Positions 36,247 to 62,562 of a stretch of DNA of 64,000 bases are shown one piece after another (position 1 is the stretch's first letter; each line of letters opens with the position of its first letter). Location: positions 124,001-188,000 of IMG/VR virus record IMGVR_UViG_3300037245_001419; one strand, written 5' to 3'. Made by a program: the position numbers and the translations under genes. The notes under the pieces were generated by a model. The model was not told the origin of the DNA. It did no database searches and saw nothing but the letters and a program-made list of their open reading frames with translations.

Positions 36247-36298
36247 TTTTACTCCTTTAATTATCTATTATTAAAGTTAACTAATTAACTAAAGTATG

Positions 36299-36679
36299 TC
36301 AATAGAATTTACGTATCCCTAAAACTTTTTGTATTTCTTCTAATTTGTCATCACACCCATCAGTATAGGCTTCATTTTTTACGTTGCTCATTATAACTTT
36401 GATGCGAGGTAATAATTTCGATGGAGTTATTTTTCTCAATATAAGACGATCCAACCACTCTTGTATGGCATTAACCTTAACATTCTTATTTAACAGGCCA
36501 GTAAGGTGTTCACCTTCTTTAGTATCCTTATAGATGGTGATACCTAAATCAAGAATACAATCATCGCACCAGTAACTTTGTGAGTTTTGTGAAATAGTTG
36601 TTATCTCATGACTAACACCACCTGCCGAATTCATCTTTCTACCGTTAGGTTCACCAATTATAATATCATCCCATGACAT
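36299..36679 (-). CDS. Hypothetical protein
   Basis: ORF with GGA SD. Confidence 0.6.
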   Translation of the reverse strand: MSWDDIIIGEPNGRKMNSAGGVSHEITTISQNSQSYWCDDCILDLGITIYKDTKEGEHLTGLLNKNVKVNAIQEWLDRLILRKITPSKLLPRIKVIMSNVKNEAYTDGCDDKLEEIQKVLGIRKFY

Positions 36680-36684
36680 AATCC

Positions 36685-37764
36685 CTACTTTACTAAATAT
36701 TGTTTCTGGTTAATCTCTTCTAGCATGCCCTTACCCTTTGTGTATGGCTCGATCCACTTCATACGTCGATCAGTCATTTTAATACCACAAGCTTGACTAC
36801 GCCAATGACCTCTTACAAGCCATTTGGGACACGACACAACGTTCTTTAAGTTTGTCAGGCAACTATACTCATCATCAGTCAAACGTCTGTTAGAACCTAT
36901 TACAATGCGACCTATCTTAGACAAATCTTTGTTCTTTTCAGCTACTTTAGTTGCTTCTTTTAACCGATTAGCTTTAGTCTTTTTCTTCTTAGTAACATAT
37001 CGCTTAGCAGGGGTATGATTAAACGATTCCATTGAGCAGATATATAACAGAGAATTGATAATGAAACTATAATGCCTTCTGTATATTGTTTCGTCATCAT
37101 TAAAGTCAATGTCGGTCATTTTTTTATCTTTAGATGTTTTACGGGCTAATAATACATCGTCAAGACTTAGTTGGATCATATCTTCAACTGAAGTACAGTT
37201 AAGTCTTAATGACATTCCAGACTGTTCCAACATACGTTGATCGCCCTTTCGCCCTTCTCCGAACGATTGGGCAAGGATAGAGTTTTCAGCTTCATTGTAT
37301 GTCAATACAATGTCTTTAAAAACCATAACTAAATCACCACTAGCTTGAACCTCTAGTGAAGGGATAGACAACACCATGTTATCAAAAGGCATTTTAATTA
37401 ATTCTGGATTGATATTTTTTATCTCTGTATTAACAAGCTTAAAGAATAAGTCTTCAGTTATATTAAACACTTTTGCTTTACGCATACCCAGATATATTGA
37501 TGCAAAAGTAGATTCAAACAATGGATTGTTATGAAAAAACATATCCCCATATACTTTGATCATTGCAAAACTACAAAACAGCAAACGACTAATGTCAGTA
37601 GGGTATGATTCATTGACAAATTTGTTGCCAAACGCATCGGCCCTTTCATCTGATATTGCAGGAAGAGCTTCATCCATTTGAGCTATAATATCTATACCTT
37701 TATCCTTAAAGTATTCGCATATCTCTTCAATGTGTAAAGGTTCAAATTTCTTAGCTTCCATCAA
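36685..37764 (-). CDS. Conserved phage protein with C-terminal VRGHWR motif
   Basis: KWLVRGHWRSQACG...KWIEPYTKG. Confidence 0.7.
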   Translation of the reverse strand: MMEAKKFEPLHIEEICEYFKDKGIDIIAQMDEALPAISDERADAFGNKFVNESYPTDISRLLFCSFAMIKVYGDMFFHNNPLFESTFASIYLGMRKAKVFNITEDLFFKLVNTEIKNINPELIKMPFDNMVLSIPSLEVQASGDLVMVFKDIVLTYNEAENSILAQSFGEGRKGDQRMLEQSGMSLRLNCTSVEDMIQLSLDDVLLARKTSKDKKMTDIDFNDDETIYRRHYSFIINSLLYICSMESFNHTPAKRYVTKKKKTKANRLKEATKVAEKNKDLSKIGRIVIGSNRRLTDDEYSCLTNLKNVVSCPKWLVRGHWRSQACGIKMTDRRMKWIEPYTKGKGMLEEINQKQYLVK

Positions 37765-37765
37765 T

Positions 37766-38326
37766 TTATCCTACAATAAACTTTGTTTCGGTTTCAATTT
37801 TGACTTGTGCTTCGATAGCCTTAAGAAGAACTTTTGCATCAAAGTTTTTCTTTGGCTCGATAAATGAAGTACCCTCATTCCACGTCTCAACACAAATCTT
37901 ATTGCTGGTAACAATGATCTTACCAGCGTCGCCAGTTTCTTCACCAGAGTAGAGAATCGTACCATCTAACTGCCTATCTAAAGGCATGAAAACTTTTGTT
38001 ATGAGGTATTCTATCCACTCAGTATAAGCATAGAACTTTTCACTACCACCCCACTCTAAAGTTGTACCATCTTCAGAAATTTCCCACCTTAACCAAAGAC
38101 TAGGTTGTGTTCTAGGGGGTTGATTATAATCAGCTATATTGAGTTCATTGTCTTGACCTGCAAAACCCTTACCAATATAGAACTCGCCCTGTACTCCATA
38201 AATTGATTCGTCAACATTTCTAGCCATTCTACGAGTATCCGCAAGCTTGTTAAGAAACACTACTTGTTGTGGTTCCAGTGCAGGTGTTATAGTCATTTTG
38301 CCTTCAAAATCAGTAGTATATCCCAT
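37766..38326 (-). CDS. Conserved phage hypothetical (MGYTTDF family)
   Basis: MGYTTDFEG...QP...WL.W...W.G.EKFY.Y.EW..YLI. Confidence 0.7.
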   Translation of the reverse strand: MGYTTDFEGKMTITPALEPQQVVFLNKLADTRRMARNVDESIYGVQGEFYIGKGFAGQDNELNIADYNQPPRTQPSLWLRWEISEDGTTLEWGGSEKFYAYTEWIEYLITKVFMPLDRQLDGTILYSGEETGDAGKIIVTSNKICVETWNEGTSFIEPKKNFDAKVLLKAIEAQVKIETETKFIVG

Positions 38327-38415
38327 GCGTTCTCCTTAAGTTTTAATAAAAGATAGTTATTTAGTTAATTTTTGTCTATACTTTAGTTAATATTATTCAT
38401 AAAATATAACTAAAG

Positions 38416-38679
38416 CTACTTGTGTTCAGCTCGTATCTTTTCAGCTAATAAAGACTGTTTTTCGGGAGAAAAGAACACATCATCATGTGGTATCTGTTCA
38501 GCAGCTTGATCTTGAACTTCATCTAAAAAATGAATTATCCCATTAAGAGTATCATCCTCCGCTTTAGTCAAGTCATTAGATCTACTCAACAACTCAAGTA
38601 TAATAAGCTTTTGACCGCTTAGCATCTCCCAGTCCATGTGCTTTAGTTCTACATTTACTACTTTATTAATGTTTGCCAT
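38416..38679 (-). CDS. Hypothetical protein
   Basis: Own promoter; GGAG SD. Confidence 0.6.
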   Translation of the reverse strand: MANINKVVNVELKHMDWEMLSGQKLIILELLSRSNDLTKAEDDTLNGIIHFLDEVQDQAAEQIPHDDVFFSPEKQSLLAEKIRAEHK

Positions 38680-38763
38680 GTTATTCTCCGTTGCTTATCT
38701 ATTATATAAGATAGCTAATTAACTAAGTCTTGTCAACAAAAAAAGATGGAATTAACCACCTTT

Positions 38764-39414: not shown

Positions 39415-39477
39415 ATGATCTCCTTGTTATCTATTATTAAAGATAGTTAATTAACTAAGCGTTGTCAATGTAAAAGA

Positions 39478-40242: not shown

Positions 40243-40307
40243 AATAGTTTCTCCGTTGAGGTCTTTAATAAAGATAGTTAATTAACTAAGAGCTGTCAAG
40301 TTAAATA

Positions 40308-40806: not shown

Positions 40807-40819
40807 TTTTCTCCATCGA

Positions 40820-40966: not shown

Positions 40967-41195
40967 ATTATATAAGATAGTTAATTAGTTAAGTATTGTC
41001 AAGTATTCTTTATACAATTAATACAATATTTTTTTCCTTTAACGACACCACCCAAATGAGATTTCACGGGGTAGTATCGTTTAAACGGAATTTTACTTTG
41101 ACAATTGTAACATGAAAATAACTCTGTAAGTTTTCTAGCCTTTCTAATAACATATCTTATAGGCTCCCTTAGTGCAGAGTTATTAACAGTCATTA

Positions 41196-41714: not shown

Positions 41715-41999
41715 TGTTATAGTTAATGTTTCTTATACTTAAGTTAGTTAAATAGCTAACCAATGTCAACAAAAAAACCCATTAAAATTAATTAATGGGT
41801 TTAAATTTACTTTAGTTTACAATCTAAAGACGAATATACTTATCTGAAAACTCTGATTCATATGTAGATTTCCATCCACAACTAGGGCATATAAATTGCC
41901 CAGACTCTTTTTTAGTTCGTGGCATCTTACGACAATTAACACTCCCACAATAAGGACGGTAATTAGGGTCGGCTATAATATTTTCCCGAACTATGCTCA

Positions 42000-42386
42000 C
42001 TATTTAGCCTTCCTTAATTCGTCACACTTTTCCCAACAAACACTTTCAGTCACATCTTTAATAACTTCAAATGCTTCATTCAATTTATCTAATGCGTCAT
42101 AGTATTTTTCATTAAACTTATCCATAGGGGCGTTTACTTTAGTTGATAGAATCGCTTCTGCTCTTCTGTCAGCAGTGGTATCCATTTGATTCCATAATTC
42201 GTCGAAAAAGAATTTAGGATTAACATCAATACCATCAATCTGCATGGTAATATCATATGACTTGTTGGATTTATTTTTGTCTAACCATTCACCGTTAAGT
42301 TCTTTAAGCATACCAACAGCTTGTAAAAAGAAGTGACCCATAAGCTCTTTATTGTTGTGCAATAGTTCTTCTCTATCAAATTTCAT
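42000..42386 (-). CDS. Hypothetical protein
   Basis: TAATG-coupled to the cca gene. Confidence 0.6.
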   Translation of the reverse strand: MKFDREELLHNNKELMGHFFLQAVGMLKELNGEWLDKNKSNKSYDITMQIDGIDVNPKFFFDELWNQMDTTADRRAEAILSTKVNAPMDKFNEKYYDALDKLNEAFEVIKDVTESVCWEKCDELRKAK

Positions 42387-43753
42387 TACGCCTCCAAACT
42401 AAAGTTTTTTATGTAGTCTCTGATTGCATCCATGTTGTCAAGGTCAACCATGTTGTCGTATATCCATTGCTTAGTACCTTTAATGATAACCCCAAGCTCT
42501 TTACAGGGTTTATCAATACCAGTAATTTCCATTACAAGCTTACCAGATACAAGTTTATCAACAGGCATATTGTTACGGTTAACAGGGTCGTTATACTTCT
42601 TAATAACAAAGTTAACATACTCCATCTTATTATCCCATGCCGATTGAGGAGATAGCTGTTCACCCCTGCACATTTCATCACAAAACGCAACCTTTACTAG
42701 TGCATCCCAGTTCACATTGTCAGTGAGAGTAATCAGCTTTGATACTCTCATTCCCTTCAGTCTATGGAATTTCATATGATTAACACAAGGGTAAACTAAA
42801 GTAGCCCTAGTCTTATTATCGATTTTAAGGCGGTCACAGATGGCGTTAACAATAGCCTCCCCTGCACCCTCATGGCAGTGATAAGTGTTCTTACCGTCCT
42901 TTACAACGTGCGTAAGAGCCTTTCCTACATCGTGTAATAGTATAGCCATGTTGATAACAGGATTTTCTTCTTTATTAACAGCTAAAGCACTCATAGTATG
43001 CAACCATGCGTTTGCACCTTCTGGATGTGAACTTAAATCATGGGGAAATTGATCTAATATGTCAACTTCTGGTAAGATATACTTCAGTAGGTTAGAAGTT
43101 TTCAATAACTCTAATGCATATGCAAAGCGTTCGCCAGTCTGTTCAGCCATTTTAAACAGCTCTTTTGCGATACGTTCTTGAGCTACTTTAGTTATGTTGT
43201 GGGCGAGTTCTTGAATGGCTTCCATTGTATCATTTTCGATTACAAAATCCATTCTACTTGCAAATCGAATAGCTCTTAACATTCTTAAATAGTCTTCAGC
43301 AAACCGCTCTTTAGGGTCTCCAACAGTTCTAATAATTTGATTTTTAATATCACATTTACCATTATGATAATCAATTACACCATAGTCTTTTCTTAAACCC
43401 ATAGAATTAATAGTAAAATCTCTTCTTTTAGTATCCTCTTCAAAGGTTACACCCAGTACTACATTGTCCGGTCTTCTACCATCAGAATATTCACCATCAG
43501 TTCTGAATTGAGCAACCTCAAAGTGATCGTCTTTATATTCTACAACAACAATACCAAAGACTTTGTTCTTACCAATATCATGAGTGGGGAATAACGATTC
43601 TATCTTATCCATGGGAACATTGGTTGCAATATCAATATCAGATGCAATTCTATTCATCAATGAATCTCTAACAGCACCACCAACAATATAAGCTTCCCCA
43701 TACTCTGATAGAAGTTTTATTATTTCCATTCCTTTAGATAATGCATTACTCAT
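42386..43753 (-). CDS. cca: CCA tRNA nucleotidyltransferase with HD domain
   Basis: YIVGGAVRD, DIDIAT, EVAQFR.D, EDTKRRDFTINSM, FAEDYLRMLRAIRFA, ERIAKEL, LLHDVGK. Confidence 0.93.
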   Translation of the reverse strand: MSNALSKGMEIIKLLSEYGEAYIVGGAVRDSLMNRIASDIDIATNVPMDKIESLFPTHDIGKNKVFGIVVVEYKDDHFEVAQFRTDGEYSDGRRPDNVVLGVTFEEDTKRRDFTINSMGLRKDYGVIDYHNGKCDIKNQIIRTVGDPKERFAEDYLRMLRAIRFASRMDFVIENDTMEAIQELAHNITKVAQERIAKELFKMAEQTGERFAYALELLKTSNLLKYILPEVDILDQFPHDLSSHPEGANAWLHTMSALAVNKEENPVINMAILLHDVGKALTHVVKDGKNTYHCHEGAGEAIVNAICDRLKIDNKTRATLVYPCVNHMKFHRLKGMRVSKLITLTDNVNWDALVKVAFCDEMCRGEQLSPQSAWDNKMEYVNFVIKKYNDPVNRNNMPVDKLVSGKLVMEITGIDKPCKELGVIIKGTKQWIYDNMVDLDNMDAIRDYIKNFSLEA

Positions 43754-44030: not shown

Positions 44031-44117
44031 TTTATTCCTTCTATATGATTACATTATTAAAGTTAGTTAATTAAATAAGTTATGTCAATATAAAACTGAA
44101 GTATTTGGCGAATTGAT

Positions 44118-44753
44118 CTAATAAGATTTTTTTATTTTTTTCAACTTATAGCGTCCTTCGATATTTTTTGGAAAATTTGCGAAGTAATTTAATAAAACTT
44201 TTTGACTGGAATTATTCCATATTTTCTTATCTATGCCTATTTTACCTTCCCAAGCCTTATATGAATTAGAAACTCTATTTACTGGATACATATCTAACCA
44301 AACATGTTTTGTATTGATAATACGTTCGTATGGAACATAAGAAGTTGTTTTTGTAGTTGTCTTATAATTTTTATTTTTATAGATTGATACATCAACTTCA
44401 CCTAATTTTGTCTGGTTGGGAGTATTCAATTTACCCTTAGTTGTACTGTAGTTAGTTACGGGTCTAACTCCTGTTTGTTTTGTAGTTGATTCGCTTGTAC
44501 TAACAAACATAAGATAATCAGCCTTTAAGGTTTTAGTATATACTTGAAACCCTAAACCATTCATTGCTTCGTATACATCATAAACCAAATTTCTGTCTTC
44601 AATACTACTATTATCCAAAGTAACAATTAGGATTTTAGAATCTTGGTTAATAGATATAGATTTGTCCGATCGGCCTAAAAAATATGCAGATTTTGTTTTA
44701 TGGTGAGTACAGTTCATTAATAACAATGTGAGTAGTAATAATAGAATTTTCAT
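44118..44753 (-). CDS. Lipoprotein (DUF4136-like fold possible)
   Basis: MKILLLLLTLLLMNC signal; ADYLMFV...WEGKI. Confidence 0.65.
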   Translation of the reverse strand: MKILLLLLTLLLMNCTHHKTKSAYFLGRSDKSISINQDSKILIVTLDNSSIEDRNLVYDVYEAMNGLGFQVYTKTLKADYLMFVSTSESTTKQTGVRPVTNYSTTKGKLNTPNQTKLGEVDVSIYKNKNYKTTTKTTSYVPYERIINTKHVWLDMYPVNRVSNSYKAWEGKIGIDKKIWNNSSQKVLLNYFANFPKNIEGRYKLKKIKKSY

Positions 44754-44756
44754 AAT

Positions 44757-45542
44757 TTAGTTCTCCTTGTTAAAAGAAATATGTTGGCACGGATATACTT
44801 TAGTTTCATCGGATGAGCTATAGTAGTATAAACTCCCTATGACAACAATGCTATCGAATTGTGATATTGCAGATATACTAGCATACAGATGATGATCACT
44901 AAGGTCGTAAGTACTATAATCTCTTGTTCTATCGAACTCCATTAGTTCACCGTCTAGATAGCGGATATAGTCGTCGTATATTGTTAACGGGTGCTTAAGG
45001 AGTAAATAAGATTCATCACCAATAAAAGCTTCAACTAAAGTATCTGGTAAAAACATCAGTTCCTTATTTTCTAGTTCACCTTTTACAGAGTGAAAATAAT
45101 ATTTCAAAACAGAATCACCAATAAGCATAGCAACATCATATTCTGTTGTAGAATCGTATTCGTCGCTGTACACTGTAAGGCTAAAGAATGTTGTATCACC
45201 AAACGTTGTATCAAATACCATATTCCCTAGACTAAGTGTTGTATCAATAGTGAATCCTTCAGATTTGTGATGTATGCTAGTGTAATTTGCATAGTCTGTT
45301 GAGTCATCTGCATTCCAATATCTAGGGTTATTATCTAGACCAAATTCGACAGGATAAAAGCCGATAGAATCGGATATTACCAGTTCCCAATTATGTTTTA
45401 CTGTACCGTCTACAATTTCTGATTCTGAACAGTAGCCATGTATAATAGGGTCTTGTTTAGGCTTAGATGAATATGTTATTTTGTCGGAGCACCCAACTAA
45501 AGTAATCGACAACACTAGTAGTGTCATAATACATAATTTCAT
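44757..45542 (-). CDS. Lipoprotein
   Basis: MKLCIMTLLVLSITLVGC lipobox. Confidence 0.7.
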   Translation of the reverse strand: MKLCIMTLLVLSITLVGCSDKITYSSKPKQDPIIHGYCSESEIVDGTVKHNWELVISDSIGFYPVEFGLDNNPRYWNADDSTDYANYTSIHHKSEGFTIDTTLSLGNMVFDTTFGDTTFFSLTVYSDEYDSTTEYDVAMLIGDSVLKYYFHSVKGELENKELMFLPDTLVEAFIGDESYLLLKHPLTIYDDYIRYLDGELMEFDRTRDYSTYDLSDHHLYASISAISQFDSIVVIGSLYYYSSSDETKVYPCQHISFNKEN

Positions 45543-45543
45543 A

Positions 45544-45849
45544 TTACCAAGAACTTTTTGCTAATATACGAGAAGAACTTTGATTGACAATTGATACTAC
45601 AATTGAAGAACCTACTCGTTTCACATAAACATCCTTAATCAAATTTGCCATATCTTCAAGTTCTTCTTTAGATGAATCGTATTGAGAACTTGATAGCTGA
45701 ACCCACAGAGAATTATTTCCAGCATAATAACACTCTATAACTGGCGAGTTTGATATTATATAATCTCCAAATTCTTTCTGTGTTGATGAAGGTGTGTATG
45801 CATACGTCATAGAGACTAAACATATGGTAATAAATATTATTTTTAACAT
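45544..45849 (-). CDS. Secreted/periplasmic protein
   Basis: Sec signal MLKIIFITICLVSMTYA. Confidence 0.6.
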   Translation of the reverse strand: MLKIIFITICLVSMTYAYTPSSTQKEFGDYIISNSPVIECYYAGNNSLWVQLSSSQYDSSKEELEDMANLIKDVYVKRVGSSIVVSIVNQSSSRILAKSSW

Positions 45850-45947
45850 GGTATATCCTTTTTGTTACTAAATTTAATTAATTATACATAAATTGTCTAT
45901 AAAAACTGAAGTACCCTCTCAAATACTTCAGTTTTGCTGTCTGCAAT

Positions 45948-46253: not shown

Positions 46254-46340
46254 AGATTCTCCGTTTGATTATATAACTAATATAGCTAAATAGATAAGTT
46301 ACGTCAACAGTTTTTGTGTAAGTTCTGTTATTTGTTACTT

Positions 46341-47632: not shown

Positions 47633-47697
47633 ATTATTCTCCGAGTGCTTATCTATTATTAAAGATAGTTAATTAACTAACCTTTGTCAAGTGTTTT

Positions 47698-48543: not shown

Positions 48544-48786
48544 ATGTTCTCCGTGTTCTTACCTATTATTAAAGATAGTTAATTAACTAAAGTCTGTCTA
48601 TAAAAAAATCATCATTAAGAATAAAATTAAGATAGACACATAATAAACTAGGCTCAATTTAGTATTGTATCGTATTCGCTTATAAGTACCGACTATAACT
48701 ATTATACAACACATTATTTGCAACAGTAAGTCGATACTTTTAATAATTTTTAATACATAATCTAAATATTCCATAAATAATCCTTA

Positions 48787-49026: not shown

Positions 49027-49081
49027 ACAGGCTCCTTATCTATTATATAATATAGTTAATTAACTAAACATTGTCAACAAA

Positions 49082-49528: not shown

Positions 49529-49654
49529 GGTTAACTCCTTATTGTATCTATTATTAAAGATAGCTTATTAACTAAAGTATGTCAACGAAAAAAACTGAAG
49601 TATAAAAGAAAAATGGGTAAGATTCCTAATATACTTCAGTCTGCATTGGAGTGT

Positions 49655-50098: not shown

Positions 50099-50157
50099 TT
50101 TAATTACTCCACTTGTTATCTATTATTAAAGATAGTTAATTAGCTAATCACTGTCAA

Positions 50158-50809: not shown

Positions 50810-50843
50810 TGCTTAACTATTATTAAAGATAGTTAATTAACTA

Positions 50844-51155
50844 TTAATAGTCAACCTTTATATCACCAATTTCTGCAATATCACCTAATTTATAGAGTAC
50901 TCTATTTTTGTATGCATCATCTAAAGTGATTCCATCAGAGGTTTTAGAAACCTTGTTTAGAGTTATTGAAATACTAGTGATAATATCGCCATTAACAGGA
51001 CTTTTAAAGAATATAACATTCAAACTACACTTAAAACCTTTGTGTGGTGCAACCGCAACATATAGTTGACCACCTAAGATTTCCCTTTTAACGTCCTCTA
51101 AGGTCTTTTGATGAATCTCACACCCTATAGGCTCTTGAATACTAAATACTGCCAT
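50844..51155 (-). CDS. Early hypothetical protein
   Basis: ORF with GAGG SD. Confidence 0.55.
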   Translation of the reverse strand: MAVFSIQEPIGCEIHQKTLEDVKREILGGQLYVAVAPHKGFKCSLNVIFFKSPVNGDIITSISITLNKVSKTSDGITLDDAYKNRVLYKLGDIAEIGDIKVDY

Positions 51156-51985: not shown

Positions 51986-52038
51986 GTTAATACTCCGTTA
52001 CTTCCTTATTATAAAGATAGTTAATTAACTAAGCCATG

Positions 52039-52239
52039 TCAAGTGTTTTTATGGTAAGGATACAAATTTAATTCTTTTTTTATTTCATCTGTATTTAAAC
52101 CCTGCTCAATAAGAACCTCTACCTTATCTAATACATCGCAAGCCTCTTGTCTGGTATCATACGTACCAAAATATTGCACCGCTTTATCAACAGTTTTTAA
52201 TACTCTAAACTTGTATTCCCATGTTATAATATTTCTCAT
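52039..52239 (-). CDS. Stand-alone AP2-like domain protein
   Basis: KFRVLKTVDKAVQYFGTYDTRQEA; aligns with the N-terminus of 32689. Confidence 0.65.
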   Translation of the reverse strand: MRNIITWEYKFRVLKTVDKAVQYFGTYDTRQEACDVLDKVEVLIEQGLNTDEIKKELNLYPYHKNT

Positions 52240-52280
52240 TCTGGTTGCTCAGTTTATTCGTTATTATATAATATAGTTAA

Positions 52281-53184
52281 TTAACTAAGTCTTGTCAAGG
52301 GTTTTTCTAGCTTAAATGTTTTTGGGTCATAATAAGTATCTAACAACTCAATGCTAAAGCGTTCACTTTCATTGCCATGAGCCTTATCCCAACTATTATT
52401 ACTAACTTGATCGTCTGTTAAAAAAACTCTATAAACTCTACCCTGCAAACTCTTTTCAGATACCCATTTTGAACCGCTATAACCTGTACCATCCCTACCA
52501 TAAGAAAACACACATAGAAAAGCCCTTCCTGTTCTATCATCTAAATTGTCTCTATCAAATTCTGCCTTTAATCTGATAGCTAAATCAATAGACTTTAGTT
52601 TGTCCTTATTCATATCACCCCCAAAAAAATTCAAATCCACACGTCTGGAAAAAGTAAACACCATTACAACTAAAGTATTTTATTTCATCACCAGTCGAAT
52701 CTCTGTACTGCTCCCATGTTTCACCGTCATCTAAAATATCAGCTTTGTACATATCGACGTTCTTTAAAAAATGATCCTCACTGCATGGGCGCTTATGTTT
52801 CATTAAGCGCTTCCACCACCGCTCCCAGTGTGAAGAGTCACGTCTTAATTTGTCGCACTGTCCAAGATACTTTAGTTTGGGTGTTGAAACAATAACATAT
52901 TCAATTGTAACATGTTCGGGTATTGTATATTGCTCGTTTGTATATCCATAATTCCGTGTTGTTTTAAACTCATGGGTAATCGTACGGTCACAATTTTTAT
53001 ACTCAATGATAGGGTACTCTATACCACAAATACAATGTGTTTGGACTTGCTTGTTTATAGTAACTTTACAAGATTTTGGGTCAATATGTATATATTCGTC
53101 ACACTTACACTTAAGTGAGTGATATACTATCAACTGTTTTTTAGCATCATGTGTGACATTTCTATGAATGTAAAATCCTGCCAT
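52281..53184 (-). CDS. Two early hypothetical ORFs (52281-52612, 52615-53184)
   Basis: 52615 carries CxC...CxC and ends YFFQTCGFEFFW. Confidence 0.5.
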
Positions 53185-53185
53185 A

Positions 53186-53446
53186 TTATATTGCCTCCAT
53201 CATATCACACAATCCAGTTACTTCAAAAAATAAAAATTGGCTCACTTTATCAGTAGTCATATTCGTTCGCTCGACAAGGGATTTAAAATCATTTACACCA
53301 TTAATAGTTTCTTTGATTAAAGCAATTTTAACAGGGTGTATTTCATCTTTCAAACGTTTCTTTAACTTTTTTAAGGTTTTACCTATAGCATCGTTCGCTA
53401 TTGGTTCATCCTTTTGATTGATAGACATATTAATAATATATGACAT
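53186..53446 (-). CDS. Early protein, paralogue of 55026-55229
   Basis: TLKKL...V.IALIK..I..V..FK.L..R....DK.S.FL..E.T.LCD..AI/V. Confidence 0.7.
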   Translation of the reverse strand: MSYIINMSINQKDEPIANDAIGKTLKKLKKRLKDEIHPVKIALIKETINGVNDFKSLVERTNMTTDKVSQFLFFEVTGLCDMMEAI

Positions 53447-53671
53447 AAGTTTATTTACTCCTTATCTTACCTATTATTAAAGATAGCTTATTAACTAAAG
53501 TATGTCAACCATTTTTCTTTAAACCAGAATAAAAACTTTCCTATTTGTTTTCCTATTTCCCACCATATAACACAATACACACAAAAAACCACAATACATA
53601 TTATACCAAATGGTATATAGATAACGCACATACCTAAGAATTCTAGTAAACTTAAATCGCTCAACATACAA

Positions 53672-54374: not shown

Positions 54375-54417
54375 GTTTAACTCCTTACCTTACCTATTAT
54401 TAAACATAGCTAATTAA

Positions 54418-54615
54418 CTAAGCATTGTCAACAGAAAAAGTGATAGTTTTACAAATAGTACATATTGCTCTACCATTACCGCCCATTTCTTGAGAATGAC
54501 TTTTTGGGCACGTACACATATTAAGTGCATCCTGTTCTAGTTTTCTAGATTTTGCATTAAGCTTGTGAGCTTCATTTATCATTGCAGTAACTTTTTTAAT
54601 ATCTGATTGTCTCAT
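54418..54615 (-). CDS. Zinc-binding protein, paralogue of the C-terminus of 58028-58417
   Basis: A.KL....R..E..A..MCTCP...IC..C. Confidence 0.7.
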   Translation of the reverse strand: MRQSDIKKVTAMINEAHKLNAKSRKLEQDALNMCTCPKSHSQEMGGNGRAICTICKTITFSVDNA

Positions 54616-55045: not shown

Positions 55046-55229
55046 CACATAGTGTTGTTGTTTCATCCATTAAGAATGCACTGATTTTATCTGAAGAAAA
55101 TTTACATCTATCTGATAGCTGTTTAAATTCTTCTACACTTATGATAGCTTTTTTGATTAGAGCAATGCGAACATAGTCGCACTCATAGCTCAATTTTTCT
55201 CTTAATTTCTTTAACGTCCGTTCAATCAT
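55026..55229 (-). CDS. Early protein, paralogue of 53186-53446
   Basis: Same motif pattern as 53186; AGGAGTGCCAA-ATG. Confidence 0.7.
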   Translation of the reverse strand: MIERTLKKLREKLSYECDYVRIALIKKAIISVEEFKQLSDRCKFSSDKISAFLMDETTTLCDTLDAV

Positions 55230-55336
55230 TTGGCACTCCTACCGTTATCTATTAATAAATATAGCTTATTAGCTAATCATTGTCAACAAAAAAGAGGTAC
55301 ACTAATTAATTTTAGTGTACCTCTTTTCGGTCGGAG

Positions 55337-55659: not shown

Positions 55660-56835
55660 TATTTTTTAAATTGGTAACAAATATTATTAGCTACTGTTAA
55701 ACCGCCACATTTAATAGGGTCTCTAACAAGTTTACAACAACCTTGATAAATAAGCTTGTCTAGTATCCGTTTGATACTTTTCTTCTTATTCTGTATGAGA
55801 GCACTCTCCATATAAGTAGGGACTTTAGGCTCTTTAAAGATAATACCAAATATTTGGCTGATTGAAAAGATAGTATCATTCGTAAAGATGATAGTTCTTA
55901 CTTTTCCGTACAATTCATCATTTGGTATACGATAACTCAAATTAACTTGACTATCCTTAAAGTATTGATCCTTGACATAATTAGGTTTTGTTTGTTCTTT
56001 ATGCATTGTTACTCCTTACCGTTTCTATTATTAAAGATAGTTAATTAGCTATCCTTTGTCAACAACTAAATGTTAAAATCTTAAAGAGTATTTGAAAATG
56101 TCAGCTATGCTGTTAAGCTTATTTGATTTTTTGGTTAGGTCTTCAATAGTTATCAATTGATTACATAGTTCAGATAAATCGGTTGGTGAAATATCGTCGG
56201 TTTCATATAAAGTAATATTCTCTTTATACAGATCTCTCAGTTTTGCAAATGATAAAAATATTGTGGCATGTTTCGCTGTTATATGCTTTATGATTTGCTT
56301 ATCACCCTGCATAATTTGAAAGAATGGGTATATTAAATCTACACCAAAATGAGACTCTTCTATTAAAACATGGACACCGTCAAAGTATTCTCCAATGATA
56401 GCATATTTGAAAGAAGGTGTTATATCGACTACTTCATTGCAGTAAACTATTGCGTAACACTTCTTAATTTCAAATGTTTTTTTCATAAATTATTCCTACA
56501 GTTTAACTATTATAAAGATAGATAGTTAATTAGTTATGTACTGTCAACAACTAAAGTAATATTTTAACAATGTAAAATACAATTTTACGTTTAAAGTCAA
56601 TTGGGTATAAATGGTTGATTGTAATTAACACCATGCTTTTATAGCTCTCTTTTATGGTAATGGTCGGTGCACAAACATGATGATCTTTTACAATATCGTT
56701 TCTAATGAGTGTTATACCTGCTTGAACGTCCGATAAATAAGAGCCTTCTTTAGTTTGTGCCTTAACCAGTTTAGGTGCTTTACGGTCTCTGTGAGCTGTT
56801 TTAATTGCCTGTATAATGTTCTTAATAATATCCAT
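55659..56835 (-). CDS. Three early hypothetical ORFs (55659-56006, 56073-56486, 56551-56835)
   Basis: Each preceded by its own promoter or hairpin element. Confidence 0.55.
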
Positions 56836-56909
56836 GTTTACCTATAAAGAAACTGAAGTATACTATAAACGGAATAACATATAGTATACTTCAGTCGGTC
56901 GGGTCGGAG

Positions 56910-57548: not shown

Positions 57549-57653
57549 TTTCTCCAACTCTTAACCTGTATTAAATATAGCTAATTAGTTAACCCCTGTC
57601 AACAAAAAAAGAGATACACCAAAATTAATTAGTGTACCTCTTTTCGGTCGGAG

Positions 57654-57965: not shown

Positions 57966-58027
57966 GTTTGGCACTCCTACCGTTATCTATTATTAAATAT
58001 AGCTTATTAACTAAAGTATGTCAACCC

Positions 58028-59028
58028 TTATTGTGATTTGTGACATACTAAACAAATATTATGACCTTCAATATAGATAAAACGTCTAGGGGGACACGTA
58101 CACATTTTTCTAGCTTCCGCTTCCATCTCTCTAGCTTGTTTAATTAGCTTTTGTGCAGTAACAAACATCCCTTTAATTTTATTAGCTTTATCGTCTGTCA
58201 TTTCACGTTTAAGCCATACTTCAGTTTGATTCTCTATTATGTCAATAACAGATAAACGTATACCCATACTATCATCATCAACCGTTACACTGTCAACATC
58301 TTGTCTATCAACATCTAACTCTAAGTTAAGATCATTATATACTTCTCTTAAGTGCATAGCTAAATCATGTTTGGCTATATCGGGGTAGTTTAACGGTAAT
58401 ACTATAGTTAAATTCATTCGTTGCTCCTACCGTTTAATCTGCAAAATTTGCTGTTATGGTATTACATTCAATATCGATTGTGATTTCAGTAAAGCCTAAA
58501 CCTTTAACATAGCCTTGATAAGTAGGTTTTTCTTTAAACTTTTCTACCGCTTCTTTACAAGTTTTACGTTGTTCAGTTGAGCACAAATATTCACCGTTCT
58601 TAAAGATGTTTATTTTTCTAGCCATTATTTACTCCAATTCTTAACCTGTATTAAAGATAGTTAATTAACTAAGCACTGTCAACAATAAAAGGTTTAAATT
58701 CACAAATATATTCTTTTTTAACCTCTTCAACTAAAGTCAAAAGCTCATTACTAAAGTAAGTACTATCATTTTGAGCCATTGAGTCAAGTGCCTTGACAAA
58801 TGTCAAAATAATTTGATCTTTGGTTGTGATACTTTTTCCAACTTCTAAAATACTTGTCTTAGTAGCAAGCAATAAATCTAAAACAGTGCTCTCCAGATTC
58901 TTACTGATAATATCATTAATATTAATATCGTCATACTTTTCAGAAAATCTTAGTATACAAGATATACCACTAATAGAATTGCTAATATGTGAACCACAAT
59001 TAGAGTCACTGATTGAACCAATATTCAT
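58028..59028 (-). CDS. Three early ORFs (58028-58417, 58434-58625, 58669-59028)
   Basis: Promoter/SD elements; 58028 ends in a MCTCP...CLVC zinc domain. Confidence 0.6.
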
Positions 59029-59132
59029 AATATACTCCCTGTATTAAATATAGTTAATTAACTAAGCAATGTCAACAAAAACTGAAGTATACCAAAAATA
59101 AATTAGTATACTTCAGTTTAGGCGGTTTGGAG

Positions 59133-59840: not shown

Positions 59841-59918
59841 GTTTGGCACTCCTACCGTTTATCTATTAATAAATATAGCTTATTAATTAATACCTGTCAA
59901 CAACTAAATCACTTTAGT

Positions 59919-60125: not shown

Positions 60126-60235
60126 GTTTGGCGCTCCTACCGTTATCTATTATTAAATATAGTTAATTAACTAACCCTTGTCAACAAAAAAAGAGATACA
60201 CCAAAATTAATTAGTGCACCTCTTTTCGGTCGGAG

Positions 60236-60523: not shown

Positions 60524-60576
60524 TTGGTACTCCTACCGTTAACTTATATTAAATATAGTTAATTAACTAAAGTATG

Positions 60577-61627
60577 TCAAGCGTTTTTTAATGCAAAGTA
60601 AATTAAATCTTCAATAGTTTTGCAGTCCTCTATTAATGAGTAGATAGTGTGATTAATATCACTACTACTTATACCTTGACCACTACCCTCAAAATCGCTT
60701 TCAAGTTGTTTTGATGCAATGTCACGTATTGCTGTTTGTATTATCTTATTTGATGATCTATAGAGCTTAAAAACACGTTTCCAATTTTCGGCGTGTGTTA
60801 ATTCTTTAACAGGTCTTACAATATCACAAGTGATGCATTCACTCATTACTTCTTTAGGAAATGACTCTGTATTAAACATTTGTCCAACAAAATACTTTTT
60901 TATTTCAAAATCTGAACTATCACCATTAACTGAAGTTTTCCAACTGTGACCATTTTCACACGTAAGTGTTGCACTAATAAGATTTGACATATTTGGTACT
61001 CCTACCGTTTATCTATTAATAAATATAGCTTATTAATTAACCGTTGTCAATGGATTATACAAATTAATAATTAATTTTATAACCTTTTCTTAAAATTATA
61101 TCTCTAACCAATTCCCTGTCTATTGTATCACCATCAAAATCTAGGTCGGGTAGTTCTTCAGCTCTAATTTCAATAGCTTCTCTAATATCACTATCTTTTA
61201 AACCGTCAATTGGATAAATCCCCTCTATAGAGTAAAAGCTATTAAAGTATTCTATAAACTTCTTTATACAATGTTCTTTTTTATCAGCCTCTGTCATACC
61301 ATTCAAAATCTCTAAAGTCATAATTGTAACCCGTTAGTTAACTATATAATAAATATAGCTTATTAATTAACCTTTGTCAATAAGTTTCTGTATTTCGTCG
61401 GTAATAATAATATTATTTTGTGACCTGTTTTTTTCCCAATGTGCACTGTCTGGCAATACACTATTTTTACCGTCATTTGTCCATATAGTATATTTTGACT
61501 TAAAAGGTTTTTCCTTTAAAACAATATTACCTTGTAATGGGAATGTAACCTCATTGTTACAACTATTAAATTTATTGTACCCATGGATAATAACTCTTTT
61601 GCCACCAACTGTTTTAGTCTCAATCAT
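60577..61627 (-). CDS. Three early ORFs (60577-60990, 61064-61321, 61367-61627)
   Basis: 60577 has a CENGHSW.T.VNG...C zinc ribbon; promoters at 61026 and 61356. Confidence 0.6.
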
Positions 61628-61700
61628 AATAAGCCTTTAAAAAAACTGAAGTACACTATACCAATGTCAAAAAATATAATGTACTTCAGTCGGGTCGGAG

Positions 61701-61964
61701 TTAAATTACTTTAGTTAGTGTATCGGTAAGGTACTGATTAAAATCCTTTACACTTATATCCATTAATGAGCCGTCAACTTCAACCCCGTCAACATAACAA
61801 CGTTGCACCCAAGTTCTATAACACTTCATAACAACATTTTTACCGTTCAACTCAAATTTTGGATAATACCAACTATCTTTGTCCTGTTTTCTCACGGTGT
61901 TAATGTGCTTTACCGCATCAATTACTGTTTTAATCGGGGTCAATGTAATTGCTTCTTTAATCAT
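61701..61964 (-). CDS. Early cassette ORF
   Basis: Conserved RBS unit; TAACTCCGACC end. Confidence 0.65.
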   Translation of the reverse strand: MIKEAITLTPIKTVIDAVKHINTVRKQDKDSWYYPKFELNGKNVVMKCYRTWVQRCYVDGVEVDGSLMDISVKDFNQYLTDTLTKVI

Positions 61965-62077
61965 GTTTGGCACTCCTACCGTTATCTATTAATAAATATA
62001 GCTAATTAACTAAGTACTGTCAACAAAAAAACTGAAGTATACCAAATAAATTCAATATACTTCAGTTTGGGTCGGAG

Positions 62078-62491
62078 TTAATTTCTAACTTCAAATCCAT
62101 TTGTTGATGGATTATATTCCATACGCTTAATATTTTTATGTTTAAGGTAGTTTAATAGCATTCCAAACTGTGTAGTCGCTTTATATTTAGCAGTGCAAGG
62201 GTGTTGCATTGCTTTGATCTTAAAGATCTCAAACCCTCTTATAAGCTTCTGAAAATCCACTATCTTATCATCACTATAATCAAATAATACTTTAGGGGCG
62301 TAAGGCATAAAATAGTCATCACTTGATTGAAACGTAAATTTGCATATTTCTACTAAACAGTGACGATTTTTATCAAATGATCTAATTAAAATAGAGTGCT
62401 CTCTAATATCCTTAAGAAATCGATTACTATGTGTACTACTTCCATAACTGAAGTAAATTTTCCCTAATTTCAATTGAACATAATCTAACAT
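62078..62491 (-). CDS. Early cassette ORF
   Basis: Conserved RBS unit; TAACTCCGACC end. Confidence 0.65.
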   Translation of the reverse strand: MLDYVQLKLGKIYFSYGSSTHSNRFLKDIREHSILIRSFDKNRHCLVEICKFTFQSSDDYFMPYAPKVLFDYSDDKIVDFQKLIRGFEIFKIKAMQHPCTAKYKATTQFGMLLNYLKHKNIKRMEYNPSTNGFEVRN

Positions 62492-62562
62492 TTTTTGGCA
62501 CTCCTACCGTTTATCTATTAATAAATATAGCTAATTAACTAAAGTATGTCAACCCCTAAACG

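What the first reader, a model, noticed from the sequence alone, without database searches (positions are those of the whole stretch)
36261..62552. ~34 early promoters share a 14-bp perfect dyad (TAGTTAATTAACTA) between -35 and -10: a large single-operator regulon
Seen: almost every transcription unit from 36 kb to the window end begins TTGACA-N17-TAT(C/A)TT. The spacer holds TAGTTAATTAACTA (12 perfect copies, about 20 variants). Variation is symmetric (TAGCT on the left mirrored by AGCTA on the right; half-site TAGYTAA), as expected for a homodimeric binder rather than simple copying. Established: T4-type PeSL cassettes (promoter, stem-loop, SD) promote modular gene shuffling (Arbiol et al. 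2010), but sigma70 spacers are normally unconstrained. Inference: one phage protein switches dozens of early genes off together (shut-off timer or carrier-state/pseudolysogeny switch). The XRE repressor (34262) and AP2-like proteins just downstream are candidates.
Basis: partly seen in the sequence, partly recalled or inferred. Interest (0 to 1): 0.8.

Follow-up and report, generated by a model that had tools for sequence, protein, structure and literature searches.

The report
Shared palindromic operator in phage early promoters
A roughly 210-250 kb phage from marine sediment drives dozens of unrelated early genes from near-identical host-type promoters that all carry the same 14-bp palindrome between the -35 and -10 boxes, most likely the landing site of one phage repressor that switches the whole early gene set off together.

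Summary
The window holds 12 perfect copies of TAGTTAATTAACTA (0 expected). It holds 34 minus-strand promoters of the form TTGACA-N4-TTAGTTAATTAACTAT(C/A)TT. The array runs on past the window, to about 45 promoters over about 36 kb.

Conservation is position-specific. Mean pairwise identity among copies is 0.92 for the -35, 0.28 for the four bases after it, 0.83 for the dyad, 0.87 for the -10 and 0.36 for the flanks. The downstream genes are unrelated to each other.

A second, syntenic phage species (orthologous proteins 32-67% identical) has at least 21 promoters with the same dyad. There the dyad (0.89) is better conserved than the -35 (0.77).

This rules out simple recent copying and points to a symmetric DNA binder.

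The only recognisable DNA-binding protein in the region is an XRE/Cro-type protein at 34262-34660. It is syntenic in both phages and its recognition helix is invariant. Its own promoter carries a conserved "broken" right half-site. Binding has not been tested.

The closest known systems are Aca-type repression of anti-CRISPR promoters, the shared early regulatory sequence of archaeal virus SIRV2, and PeSL cassettes. I rate it a new variant of a known kind.

The parts
34747..34775 (-). Promoter of the XRE gene. The -35 is perfect. The dyad is degenerate: the left half TAGTT is kept, and the right half reads AGTTA instead of AACTA.
   Evidence: The same broken right half is kept in two diverged orthologous loci (L032; phage B).
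34262..34660 (-). XRE/Cro-CI-type helix-turn-helix protein of 132 aa. It is the candidate dyad binder and sits at the distal end of the early array.
   Evidence: PF01381 E=1e-16. PHROG transcriptional repressor families. The start codon was fixed by reading the sequence. Orthologs are 64% and 55% identical, with an invariant recognition helix QPPTLSxYE. The HTH core is modelled at pLDDT above 90 and resembles SinR, ImmR, DdrO and C-proteins.
33301..33329 (-). Promoter-like site with a strongly degenerate dyad, upstream of gene 32689-33261 and downstream of the XRE operon.
   Evidence: The orthologous site in phage B is degenerate as well (L242 position 11409).
36274..36302 (-). Early promoter with dyad variant. 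N4 = TACT, which forms the 10-mer TACTTTAGTT.
38350..38378 (-). Early promoter with dyad variant (-35 is TAGACA).
38708..38736 (-). Early promoter with dyad variant.
   Evidence: Orthologous pair with phage B.
39440..39468 (-). Early promoter with perfect dyad.
40271..40299 (-). Early promoter with perfect dyad.
40974..41002 (-). Early promoter with dyad variant.
41741..41769 (-). Early promoter with dyad variant, preceded by a terminator hairpin.
44060..44088 (-). Early promoter with dyad variant. It is one end point of the strain indel.
45871..45899 (-). Degenerate promoter-like site (-35 is TAGACA). It is the other end point of the strain indel.
46279..46307 (-). Early promoter with dyad variant.
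47662..47690 (-). Early promoter with perfect dyad.
48572..48600 (-). Early promoter with perfect dyad (-35 is TAGACA).
49049..49077 (-). Early promoter with perfect dyad.
49557..49585 (-). Early promoter with dyad variant.
50129..50157 (-). Early promoter with dyad variant.
50826..50854 (-). Early promoter with perfect dyad (-35 is TTGACT).
52014..52042 (-). Early promoter with perfect dyad.
52270..52298 (-). Early promoter with perfect dyad.
53480..53508 (-). Early promoter with dyad variant.
54403..54431 (-). Early promoter with dyad variant.
55258..55286 (-). Early promoter with dyad variant, preceded by a terminator hairpin.
56034..56062 (-). Early promoter with dyad variant.
56519..56547 (-). 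Early promoter with dyad variant.
57574..57602 (-). Early promoter with dyad variant, preceded by a terminator hairpin.
57996..58024 (-). Early promoter with dyad variant.
58654..58682 (-). Early promoter with perfect dyad.
59047..59075 (-). Early promoter with perfect dyad, preceded by a terminator made of an inverted pair of the 10-mer.
59872..59900 (-). Early promoter with dyad variant.
60156..60184 (-). Early promoter with perfect dyad.
60552..60580 (-). Early promoter with perfect dyad.
61022..61050 (-). Early promoter with dyad variant.
61352..61380 (-). Early promoter with dyad variant.
61995..62023 (-). Early promoter with dyad variant, preceded by the terminator at 62029-62068.
62524..62552 (-). 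Early promoter with dyad variant. It is the last one inside the window; about 10 more follow beyond the window end.
36685..37761 (-). AcrVA2-like protein gene inside the regulon, about 2 kb upstream of the XRE gene.
   Evidence: Precomputed Pfam PF26125. The same family is listed in phage B. My own Pfam scan did not list it, so the assignment is tentative.
44103..45858 (.). Segment present in the window but absent from a 98.6-99.8% identical strain (L004). Both end points lie in a terminator-arm/T-run/-35 cassette.

Best explanation
The 14-bp palindrome is an operator. It lies at about -25 to -12 relative to the predicted transcription start, inside the 17-bp spacer of strong host-sigma70/sigmaA-type promoters. 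A symmetric (dimeric) phage-encoded DNA-binding protein is proposed to sit on it and exclude RNA polymerase. The most likely binder is the XRE/Cro-type protein encoded at 34262-34660.

That protein is itself made from an early-type promoter. As it accumulates, it would turn down about 45 early transcription units (about 70 mostly orphan genes, including an AcrVA2-like gene) in a coordinated way. This is a genome-scale negative-feedback shut-off, like Aca control of anti-CRISPR promoters. The XRE gene's own promoter has a conserved defective right half-site. It would therefore be repressed less and keep the regulator supplied.

The promoter-operator unit is often joined to an upstream terminator. 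It also behaves as a portable cassette, so that newly acquired genes are plugged into the same timed regulon.

Shown: the motif, its position-specific and cross-species conservation, its palindromic profile, the synteny of the XRE gene and the conservation of its helix. Inferred: protein binding, the identity of the binder, and the sign and timing of regulation.
For: 1. Position-specific constraint within one genome. Mean pairwise identity among 42 copies is 0.92 for the -35, 0.28 for N4, 0.83 for the dyad, 0.87 for the -10, 0.36 for the upstream flank and 0.36 for positions 42-60. The downstream genes are essentially unrelated: only 4 weak paralogous pairs among 107 predicted genes.
2. Palindrome. 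The consensus is a perfect 7+7 dyad. From the window's base composition, the chance that 7 pairs are complementary is about 0.275^7, or about 1e-4. T1, A2 and T5 are invariant in both halves (42/42). On the right the TA belongs to the -10, but on the left it has no known polymerase role.
3. Cross-species footprint. Phage B (contig Ga0484852_0000042) is syntenic, with orthologs 32-67% identical. It has at least 21 promoters with the same dyad. In B, identity is 0.89 for the dyad against 0.77 for the -35 and 0.32-0.38 for the flanks. In orthologous promoter pairs only the -35 to -10 block aligns.
4. The dyad occurs only in promoters. No further TAGYTAATTARCTA exists outside them, and single half-sites are not enriched.
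5. It is not a general host promoter feature. The promoter-plus-dyad pattern has 0 hits in 185,579 species genomes and 0 hits in the metagenome contig set.
6. Candidate binder. XRE is the only DNA-binding family hit among about 80 proteins scanned. It is syntenic in A, B and L032 and its recognition helix is invariant. Its fold matches dimeric palindrome-binding repressors. Its own promoter has the same defective right half-site in all three phages.
7. Precedent. Aca HTH proteins repress strong early promoters through an inverted repeat inside the core promoter (PMC9410906). In SIRV2, 11 of 13 early genes share one regulatory sequence thought to be bound by Aca8 (PMC11065993).
Against: There is no binding, expression or transcript data. 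No RNA run holds this phage. The host is unknown.

The three XRE orthologs share both the helix and the operator, so there is no covariation that ties this protein to this site. HTH cores are usually the best-conserved part of such proteins anyway.

The C-terminal half of the XRE model, the presumed dimerisation part, has low confidence (pLDDT below 50).

One of the 45 small early proteins has a weak hit to a PHROG 'DNA binding protein' family (E=9e-4). I could not identify which protein it is, so another early protein could be the binder.

The right arm of the dyad overlaps the -10, so part of its conservation is promoter function.

The -10 is always TAT(C/A)TT followed by T, and never TATAAT. 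This shows there are further constraints that I do not understand.
Confidence: 0.55

Rival explanations
1. The dyad is a protein-binding site, but the binder is not the XRE protein. It could be another early orphan protein, a protein injected with the DNA, or a host regulator or nucleoid protein. The effect could be something other than timed shut-off, for example anti-silencing, activation, or coupling to host physiology.
For: Nothing ties XRE to the site except proximity, synteny and fold. About 70 early proteins have no recognisable family. One has a weak hit to a 'DNA binding protein' PHROG. The pentamer AACTA/TAGTT of the dyad also forms part of a very abundant 10-mer, AACTRAAGTA, that some other factor must read.
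Against: A site that fills an optimal 17-bp spacer is the classic position for steric repression, not activation. MerR-type activators use 19-20 bp spacers (established knowledge). The promoter-plus-dyad pattern is absent from all representative bacterial genomes, so it is not a recognisable host regulon signature. The conserved defective operator at the XRE gene's own promoter is most simply explained if XRE is part of the circuit.
Confidence: 0.2
2. There is no dedicated binder. The conserved 30-45 bp block is kept uniform by copying and gene conversion among cassettes, because it serves as the homology patch for PeSL-like modular shuffling. The palindrome is incidental.
For: A strain-level indel (44103-45858) ends in a terminator/T-run/-35 cassette on both sides. 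There are subfamilies of cassettes with a shared N4 (TACT, 8 copies) or a shared 5' leader. One promoter differs between strains by a block of changes inside the dyad, as if swapped. The PeSL literature proposes this role (PMC2839356, PMC4122927).
Against: Conversion or copying would homogenise contiguous tracts. Yet the four bases in the middle of the block are random (0.28) while their neighbours are 0.83-0.92. The same dyad is held in a species with about 45% protein identity, where the flanks, the leaders and even the -35 have drifted. A perfect palindrome with a mirrored invariance pattern is not predicted. The recombination role can coexist with an operator role.
Confidence: 0.1
3. The whole -35 to +7 block is an extended promoter read asymmetrically by the transcription machinery itself. 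That machinery could be the host holoenzyme with unusual spacer preferences, or a polymerase modified or escorted by a phage factor. The spacer sequence would set promoter strength.
For: Spacer length is fixed at 17. The -10 is invariably TAT(C/A)TT plus T. Positions 29-41 (discriminator and start region) are also conserved in phage A. Strong phage promoters such as those of T5 are known to share sequence outside the hexamers (my own knowledge, not checked here).
Against: RNA polymerase contacts are not two-fold symmetric, so they do not predict a perfect palindrome or the mirrored invariant T, A and T. There is no extended -10 TG. The downstream block is not conserved in phage B whereas the dyad is. 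The pattern is absent from bacterial genomes.
Confidence: 0.1

Closest known systems
Aca (anti-CRISPR-associated) HTH repressors and their acr-aca promoters (Shehreen et al. 2022, PMC9410906)
   Same: Strong consensus -35/-10 early promoters carry an inverted repeat inside the core promoter. A small HTH protein made from the same early programme binds it and damps transcription. A second, similar repeat is sometimes found just downstream. Here an AcrVA2-like gene lies within the regulon, about 2 kb from the HTH gene.
   Different: Aca systems control one operon, and the aca gene sits directly behind the acr gene. Here one operator is repeated in about 45 separate promoters over about 36 kb. 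The HTH gene has its own promoter with a weakened operator. Membership of any Aca sequence family could not be tested.
Shared early regulatory sequence of archaeal virus SIRV2 and relatives (Bhoobalan-Chitty et al. 2024, PMC11065993)
   Same: Many small, unrelated, early, terminally clustered genes share one highly similar regulatory sequence. That sequence is thought to be shut off by a small wHTH protein (Aca8). [quoted passage not shown]
   Different: That system is archaeal (BRE/TATA promoters), covers 11 of 13 early genes and has a different regulator fold. Here the promoters are bacterial sigma70-type, the operator is a defined 14-bp palindrome in the spacer, and there are about four times as many units.
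PeSL (promoter-early stem-loop) cassettes of T4-type phages (Arbiol et al. 2010, PMC2839356; Comeau et al. 2014, PMC4122927)
   Same: Repeated composite terminator plus near-consensus sigma70 promoter units flank orphan genes in a plastic region. An indel between close strains has its end points in the cassettes.
   Different: In the passages I retrieved from these papers by term search, 'spacer' and 'palindrom' do not occur, and no repressor is discussed. They stress the upstream stem-loop and recombination. This phage shows no detectable kinship to T4-type phages.
Multi-site immunity repressors of temperate phages: mycobacteriophage L5 gp71 operators/stoperators (PMC9283540); P1 C1 and phiC31 conserved inverted repeats (my own knowledge, not checked here)
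   Same: One phage repressor recognises more than 20 copies of one short site spread over the genome and silences many transcription units at once.
   Different: L5-type sites are asymmetric 13-mers bound by a monomer. They are orientation-dependent and mostly lie between genes, where they stop elongation. Here the site is a symmetric dyad placed inside each promoter spacer. No lysogeny functions were seen.
Lambda/434/P22 CI-Cro operators, and engineered promoters with lac or tet operators in the spacer (established knowledge)
   Same: A 14-17 bp dyad bound by an HTH dimer overlaps the -35/-10 region and excludes polymerase. The protein belongs to the same HTH_3 (XRE) superfamily.
   Different: Those systems have 3-6 operators at one or two control regions. 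Here the operator is multiplied across a whole gene class.
SPO1 host-takeover module (PMC6873191)
   Same: A cluster of small early genes, each or in short operons, with very strong host-type promoters and strong ribosome-binding sites.
   Different: The SPO1 module has 26 genes in 12.4 kb. SPO1 early shut-off is attributed to polymerase-binding proteins and sigma replacement, not to a shared operator (my own knowledge). There is no sequence relationship.

Membership tests
XRE/Cro-CI helix-turn-helix repressor with dyad operator | HTH_3 (PF01381) DNA-binding domain | tested here: met
   PF01381 E=1.1e-16 for residues 54-108 of the long ORF. The five-helix core is modelled at pLDDT above 90. 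Best structural matches are SinR, C.BclI, C.AhdI, DdrO, ImmR and 434 repressor.
XRE/Cro-CI helix-turn-helix repressor with dyad operator | 14-18 bp two-fold symmetric operator overlapping the regulated promoter | tested here: met
   A perfect 7+7 palindrome lies at spacer positions 11-24 of 42 promoters, with a mirrored invariance pattern.
XRE/Cro-CI helix-turn-helix repressor with dyad operator | Protein dimerises and binds that operator | not testable with these tools
   The C-terminal 50 residues are modelled with pLDDT below 50. No protein-DNA modelling or assay is available.
XRE/Cro-CI helix-turn-helix repressor with dyad operator | Part of a lysogeny switch (integrase, divergent cro-like gene) | tested here: not met
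   No integrase, recombinase or partition family appeared among the proteins scanned in the window. The rest of the 212-249 kb genome was not examined.
Aca-type repression of anti-defence promoters | Inverted repeat inside a strong consensus core promoter | tested here: met
   compared with PMC9410906 section 18.
Aca-type repression of anti-defence promoters | HTH gene directly downstream of, and co-transcribed with, a known anti-CRISPR gene | tested here: not met
   The AcrVA2-like gene (36685-37761) and the XRE gene (34262-34660) are separated by three genes and two promoters (36302, 34775).
Aca-type repression of anti-defence promoters | Sequence membership in an Aca1-Aca13 family | not testable with these tools
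   None of the libraries contains Aca models. The best NCBIfam hit is the RstR repressor family, below its cut-off (49.8 against 80 bits).
Aca-type repression of anti-defence promoters | Cognate promoter repressed by the protein | not testable with these tools
   This needs a reporter assay.
PeSL cassettes (T4-type phages) | Repeated near-consensus sigma70 early promoters in a region rich in orphan genes | tested here: met
PeSL cassettes (T4-type phages) | Stem-loop/terminator joined to the promoter | tested here: inconclusive
   Clear hairpin plus T-run lies directly upstream of some promoters (for example 62029-62068; 41769, 55286, 57602, 59075 and 60184), but not of all of them.
PeSL cassettes (T4-type phages) | Indels between close relatives with end points in the cassettes | tested here: met
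   The segment 44103-45858 is absent from L004. Both ends read ACTTCAGTTTT(T)ATA followed by a -35 box.
PeSL cassettes (T4-type phages) | Host genome is a T4-type myovirus | tested here: not met
   No megablast match to 50,697 phage records. No tblastn match for the 1050-aa protein. No PHROG hits for the large structural-region proteins. Core marker genes outside the window were not examined.
L5-type operator/stoperator regulon | More than 20 copies of one repressor site across the genome | tested here: met
   42-47 copies.
L5-type operator/stoperator regulon | Asymmetric site, orientation-dependent, mostly intergenic, blocking elongation | tested here: not met
   The site is a palindrome and always lies inside a promoter spacer. 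No copies occur outside promoters within the window. The only promoter-less near-dyads (two) lie beyond the window end, in the gene-less region upstream of the array (PMC9283540).

The most novel reading that the evidence does not exclude
The promoter-operator-(terminator) unit would be a portable 'plug-in' that lets a jumbo phage lineage add any newly captured gene to one timed, self-limiting early (largely anti-defence) regulon. The same short word AACTA/TAGTT would be the unit of a wider phage-specific DNA code. It appears inverted in the operator. It appears next to the related pentamer AAGTA/TACTT in the hyper-abundant 10-mer AACTRAAGTA (about 1.3 per kb, on both strands, even inside genes, and paired to form terminators). 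It appears as a direct repeat in the regulator's own promoter. Under this reading, one or two phage proteins would read these arrangements to coordinate early shut-off, termination and perhaps genome-wide marking of phage DNA.
Probability: 0.12. Interest if true: 0.85.

Novelty: new variant of a known kind. Interest (0 to 1): 0.62.

Why it matters
If one repressor really controls about 45 promoters, this is the largest single-operator regulon I know of in a phage. It would be a bacterial counterpart of the shared early regulatory sequence recently used to find anti-defence genes in archaeal viruses.

The motif immediately labels about 70 mostly orphan genes in phage A, and dozens more in phage B, as one co-regulated early class. 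That class includes an AcrVA2-like gene, so it gives a ready candidate list for host-takeover and anti-defence functions.

The circuit is directly testable in a heterologous host because the promoters are consensus sigma70 type: one 132-aa protein, one 14-bp site, and one naturally weakened variant.

It also shows how regulatory cassettes can combine timing control with modular gene shuffling. The compact, tight promoter-operator pair could be useful as a synthetic-biology part.

Tried and rejected
1. Looking for close annotated relatives. Megablast of 28 kb against INPHARED gave nothing, and tblastn of the 1050-aa protein gave nothing.
2. Pattern scans for other genomes with the promoter. The strict pattern found only the source contig and a 99% identical strain in IMG/VR, and nothing in the metagenome or genome collections. 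The degenerate and -35-less patterns gave only single chance hits, mostly in extremely AT-rich DNA.
3. Relatives via early proteins. The tRNA nucleotidyltransferase and a 254-aa orphan found only the same species. DUF1281 homologs led to unrelated large phages without such promoters. The useful relative (phage B) came from the exhaustive search with the XRE protein.
4. RNA evidence. Only two DNA runs from marine sediment hold the sequence and no RNA run does.
5. Left/right covariation of dyad variants. None was found.
6. Strain-level SNP depletion in promoters. There are too few differences (about 110 in 15 kb, clustered in genes) to say anything.
7. A second dyad, TATCT-N8-AGATA, and a 'third half-site' TAGATAA at the transcription start. 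The latter is conserved at a fixed position in phage A but not in phage B. I therefore do not count it as part of the operator.
8. Host identification through the abundant 10-mer arranged as hairpins. There were many single chance hits in diverse bacteria and no genome locus was dense in the motif.
9. Bacteroidota-type promoter reading (TAnnTTTG / TTTG). I rejected this because the spacing is wrong and the genes use strong GGAG ribosome-binding sites.
10. Identifying the small protein with the weak 'DNA binding protein' PHROG hit. Ten likely candidates were scanned and none was it.
11. AP2 domains near the XRE gene. None was found.

Full report
WHAT IS THERE

The window is part of IMG/VR contig IMGVR_UViG_3300037245_001419 (211,777 bp). 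The same phage also occurs on a 248,963-bp JGI contig, and the samples are marine sediment metagenomes. It has no close relative among 50,697 deposited phage genomes. Its large structural-region proteins have no PHROG family.

From about 34.8 kb to the window end, all genes lie on the minus strand. The perfect 14-mer TAGTTAATTAACTA occurs 12 times, against 0 expected. TTGACA-N17-TATNTT occurs 26 times, against 0.21 expected. All 26 are on the minus strand and all have a dyad-like spacer. With up to 5 mismatches to the 29-bp consensus there are 34 sites between 34775 and 62552. Each is followed within about 20-30 nt by GGAG and a start codon.

The array continues beyond the window, through L020 and L037, to the window-equivalent of about 70.8 kb. 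It then stops at a 1.8-kb gene-less region. In all there are 42 sites at up to 5 mismatches plus several more degenerate ones, over about 36 kb.

IS THE SPACER CONSTRAINED IN ITS OWN RIGHT?

Yes. Among the 42 copies, mean pairwise identity is as follows:
- -35 hexamer: 0.92
- four bases after the -35 (N4): 0.28, the level of unrelated AT-rich DNA
- dyad: 0.83 (0.81 without the two bases shared with the -10)
- -10: 0.87
- upstream flank: 0.36
- positions 42-60: 0.36

The genes behind the promoters are unrelated to each other. There are only four weak paralogous pairs among 107 predicted genes. Simple duplication of gene-plus-promoter is therefore excluded. A contiguous conversion tract would not leave four random bases in its middle.

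The consensus is a perfect 7+7 palindrome. From the base composition, that has a chance of about 1e-4. Half-site positions T1, A2 and T5 are invariant in 42/42 copies on both sides, and position 4 is Y on both sides. On the right, the TA is the start of the -10. On the left, the mirrored TA has no known polymerase function.

A variant on the left is not mirrored by the same variant on the right. Identical halves occur in 12/42 copies, with shuffle p=0.39.

The dyad is confined to promoters. There is no further TAGYTAATTARCTA outside them, and single half-sites are not enriched.

COMPARATIVE EVIDENCE

Pattern scans of IMG/VR, the metagenome set and 185,579 species genomes found the promoter only in this phage and a 99% identical strain.

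The exhaustive protein search with the XRE protein gave one full-length relative at 55% identity (P0128). It lies on a 56.6-kb contig from the same sediment study. The gene order there is the same: tRNA nucleotidyltransferase, AcrVA2-like, XRE, NUMOD4, cpYpsA, ligase-sized gene, Macro, NADAR. I call this phage B.

Orthologous proteins of phage B are 32-67% identical to those of the window phage. DNA aligns only in patches, at 65-75%. Three overlapping loci give 39.7 kb of phage B, with at least 21 promoters carrying TTAGTTAATTAACTATATT.

In B, the dyad (0.89) and the -10 (0.94) are better conserved among copies than the -35 (0.77). The flanks are at 0.32-0.38. In seven orthologous promoter pairs, only the -35 to -10 block aligns between the species. 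This is a phylogenetic footprint on the dyad.

The block downstream of the -10 includes a TAGATAA 'third half-site' at the predicted transcription start. It is conserved at a fixed position in phage A even when the six bases before it differ. It is not conserved in B (0.43-0.47). I therefore leave it out of the operator.

WHO BINDS?

I scanned about 80 proteins of the window against Pfam, and some also against PHROGs and NCBIfam. The only DNA-binding regulator found is the XRE/Cro-CI-type protein.

- Its true start is at 34660, giving 132 aa.
- PF01381 scores E=1e-16.
- Its nearest phage relatives are CI-like or immunity repressors of Bacillota phages, at 30-40% identity.
- Its HTH core is modelled confidently and resembles SinR, ImmR, DdrO, C-proteins and 434 repressor, all of them dimeric palindrome binders.
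- Its C-terminal third is modelled poorly.
- Three orthologs (A; L032 at 64%; B at 55%) have an invariant recognition helix QPPTLSxYE. This matches the unchanged operator, but it provides no covariation.

The XRE gene is the penultimate unit of the array. Its own promoter has a perfect -35, an intact left arm and an altered right arm (AGTTA instead of AACTA). This defect is kept in all three phages. The next promoter downstream (33329) is also degenerate in both species. A regulator whose own promoter escapes full repression fits a feedback design.

No AP2 domain was found near the XRE gene.

One of 45 small early proteins has a weak hit to a 'DNA binding protein' PHROG (E=9e-4). I could not locate which protein it is.

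MECHANISM PROPOSED

The -10 occupies positions 23-28, so the transcription start is predicted at about position 35-36. The dyad then spans about -25 to -12 of an optimal 17-bp spacer. This is the position from which bound dimers exclude polymerase, as in lambda-type operators and engineered lac or tet promoters (established knowledge).

The best-supported reading is as follows:
- Host polymerase fires all about 45 units at once on entry.
- The XRE protein, or another early protein, accumulates.
- It occupies the operators and shuts the class down together.
- The regulator's own weakened operator keeps it expressed.

This is the logic shown for Aca proteins at anti-CRISPR promoters, where an inverted repeat lies inside a strong core promoter (PMC9410906). 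It is also the logic proposed for Aca8 at the shared regulatory sequence of 11 of 13 SIRV2 early genes (PMC11065993).

Consistent with this reading, the regulon includes a gene that the collection's precomputed Pfam table calls AcrVA2-like, in both phages. My own Pfam scan did not return that family.

Binding, the identity of the binder and the timing are all inferences.

CASSETTE BEHAVIOUR

Many promoters sit directly after a hairpin plus T-run. A 1.75-kb segment (44103-45858) is missing from a 99% identical strain, and both of its end points lie in terminator-arm/T-run/-35 sequence. There are subfamilies of cassettes that share N4 or the 5' leader. This matches the PeSL concept of composite terminator-promoter units that mediate modular shuffling (PMC2839356, PMC4122927). 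The phage is not detectably T4-like, however. In the PeSL passages I retrieved by term search, 'spacer' and 'palindrom' do not occur.

I regard the recombination role as real and additional. It is not an alternative to the operator role.

RIVALS

- Another binder or another sign of regulation: 0.2.
- Concerted evolution only: 0.1. This is weakened by the random N4, by the cross-species footprint and by the palindrome.
- An extended polymerase-read promoter: 0.1. This is weakened by the two-fold symmetry, by the absence of the pattern from bacterial genomes and by the loss of the downstream block in B.

An unexplained point is that the -10 is always TAT(C/A)TT plus T and never TATAAT, in both phages.

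NOVELTY

Multi-site repressors are known. In L5, more than twenty asymmetric 13-mers are bound by a monomer and mostly block elongation (PMC9283540). P1 C1 and phiC31 are further examples, from my own knowledge. Operator-in-promoter feedback is known from Aca and from CI/Cro. Shared early regulatory sequences are known from SIRV2.

Three things are new here:
- The combination and scale: one symmetric operator embedded in the spacer of about 45 consensus sigma70 promoters.
- Its conservation across two species of an otherwise unknown jumbo-phage lineage.
- Its fusion with shuffling cassettes.

I class it as a new variant of a known kind, with interest about 0.6.

SIDE OBSERVATION

The 10-mer AACTRAAGTA occurs 68 times in the window, against 0.87 expected. 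It occurs 97 times in the 72.5 kb available and 48 times in 39.7 kb of phage B. It lies on both strands, inside genes as well as between them. It has no flanking consensus, and it often occurs as inverted pairs that form the terminators in front of the promoters.

Its reverse complement, TACTTTAGTT, overlaps N4 and the left arm of the dyad in 8 promoters. It shares the pentamer TAGTT/AACTA with the operator. No bacterial genome locus fetched is dense in it. I could not explain it.

Noticed in passing
whole window, e.g. 1655, 2345, 3530, 16090, 34893, 45904/45924, 59080/59109, 62030/62058; also L020, L037, and phage B loci L242/L244/L246: The 10-mer AACTRAAGTA is hugely over-represented. It occurs 68 times in the window against 0.87 expected, 97 times in 72.5 kb, and 48 times in 39.7 kb of the related phage B. 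It lies on both strands, and 37 copies are inside coding regions. It has no flanking consensus. It often forms inverted pairs that make up terminator hairpins. It shares the pentamer AACTA/TAGTT with the operator. The N4=TACT promoters contain it in full. Its function is unknown; possibilities are a uptake-sequence-like, Chi-like, modification or nicking site, or a protein-binding site.
   Followed up: partly
L037:8210-9990 (249-kb contig, just upstream of the first promoter of the array; beyond the window end): A gene-less region of about 1.8 kb bounds the promoter array. It is very dense in the 10-mer in both orientations. It also holds two promoter-less near-dyads (around L037 9629-9665). 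It could be an origin, a terminus or a control region.
   Followed up: no
window 44103-45858: This segment, with about three small genes, is present here but absent from a 98.6-99.8% identical strain (L004). Both junctions read ACTTCAGTTTT(T)ATA followed by a -35 box. That is recombination between terminator-promoter cassettes, as described for PeSLs.
   Followed up: yes
window 36685-37761 (-): The 358-aa protein is listed as PF26125 AcrVA2-like in the collection's precomputed table, and the same holds for its ortholog in phage B. The Pfam scan run here returned no family for it. The anti-CRISPR assignment is therefore tentative.
   Followed up: partly
window 22476-23030 (-) and 22951-23439 (-): Adjacent NADAR (E=4e-51) and Macro domain genes are conserved next to each other in phage B. 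Both families process ADP-ribose, which suggests reversal of ADP-ribosylation-based host defence.
   Followed up: no
all promoters, positions 23-29 of the 29-bp unit (e.g. window 39440-39446): The -10 hexamer is always TATCTT or TATATT followed by T, and never TATAAT, in both phage species. The T at the fifth position is invariant. This is an extra constraint that promoter strength alone does not explain.
   Followed up: partly
positions 35-41 after each -35 start (e.g. window 39427-39433): TAGATAA resembles a third half-site (TAGNTAA). It sits at the predicted transcription start at a fixed distance, even when the six bases before it differ (TAATAA and AGTTCA families). It is conserved in phage A (about 0.61 pairwise identity over these positions) but not in phage B.
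   Followed up: yes
window 42386-43753 (-): A tRNA nucleotidyltransferase (CCA-adding type, PF01743 plus PF12627) is encoded inside the early array, although no tRNA gene is present in the window. Its ortholog in phage B is 55% identical.
   Followed up: no
window 47698-48375 (-): BLAST self-hits at 47711-48103 (72-78% identity, offset by about 150-200 bp) indicate internal tandem repeats within this 225-aa orphan gene.
   Followed up: no
window 53186-53446 (-) and 55026-55229 (-): This is one of the very few paralogous pairs in the array (47% identity over 66 aa). Both proteins are small and lysine-rich. No family hit was found.
   Followed up: partly
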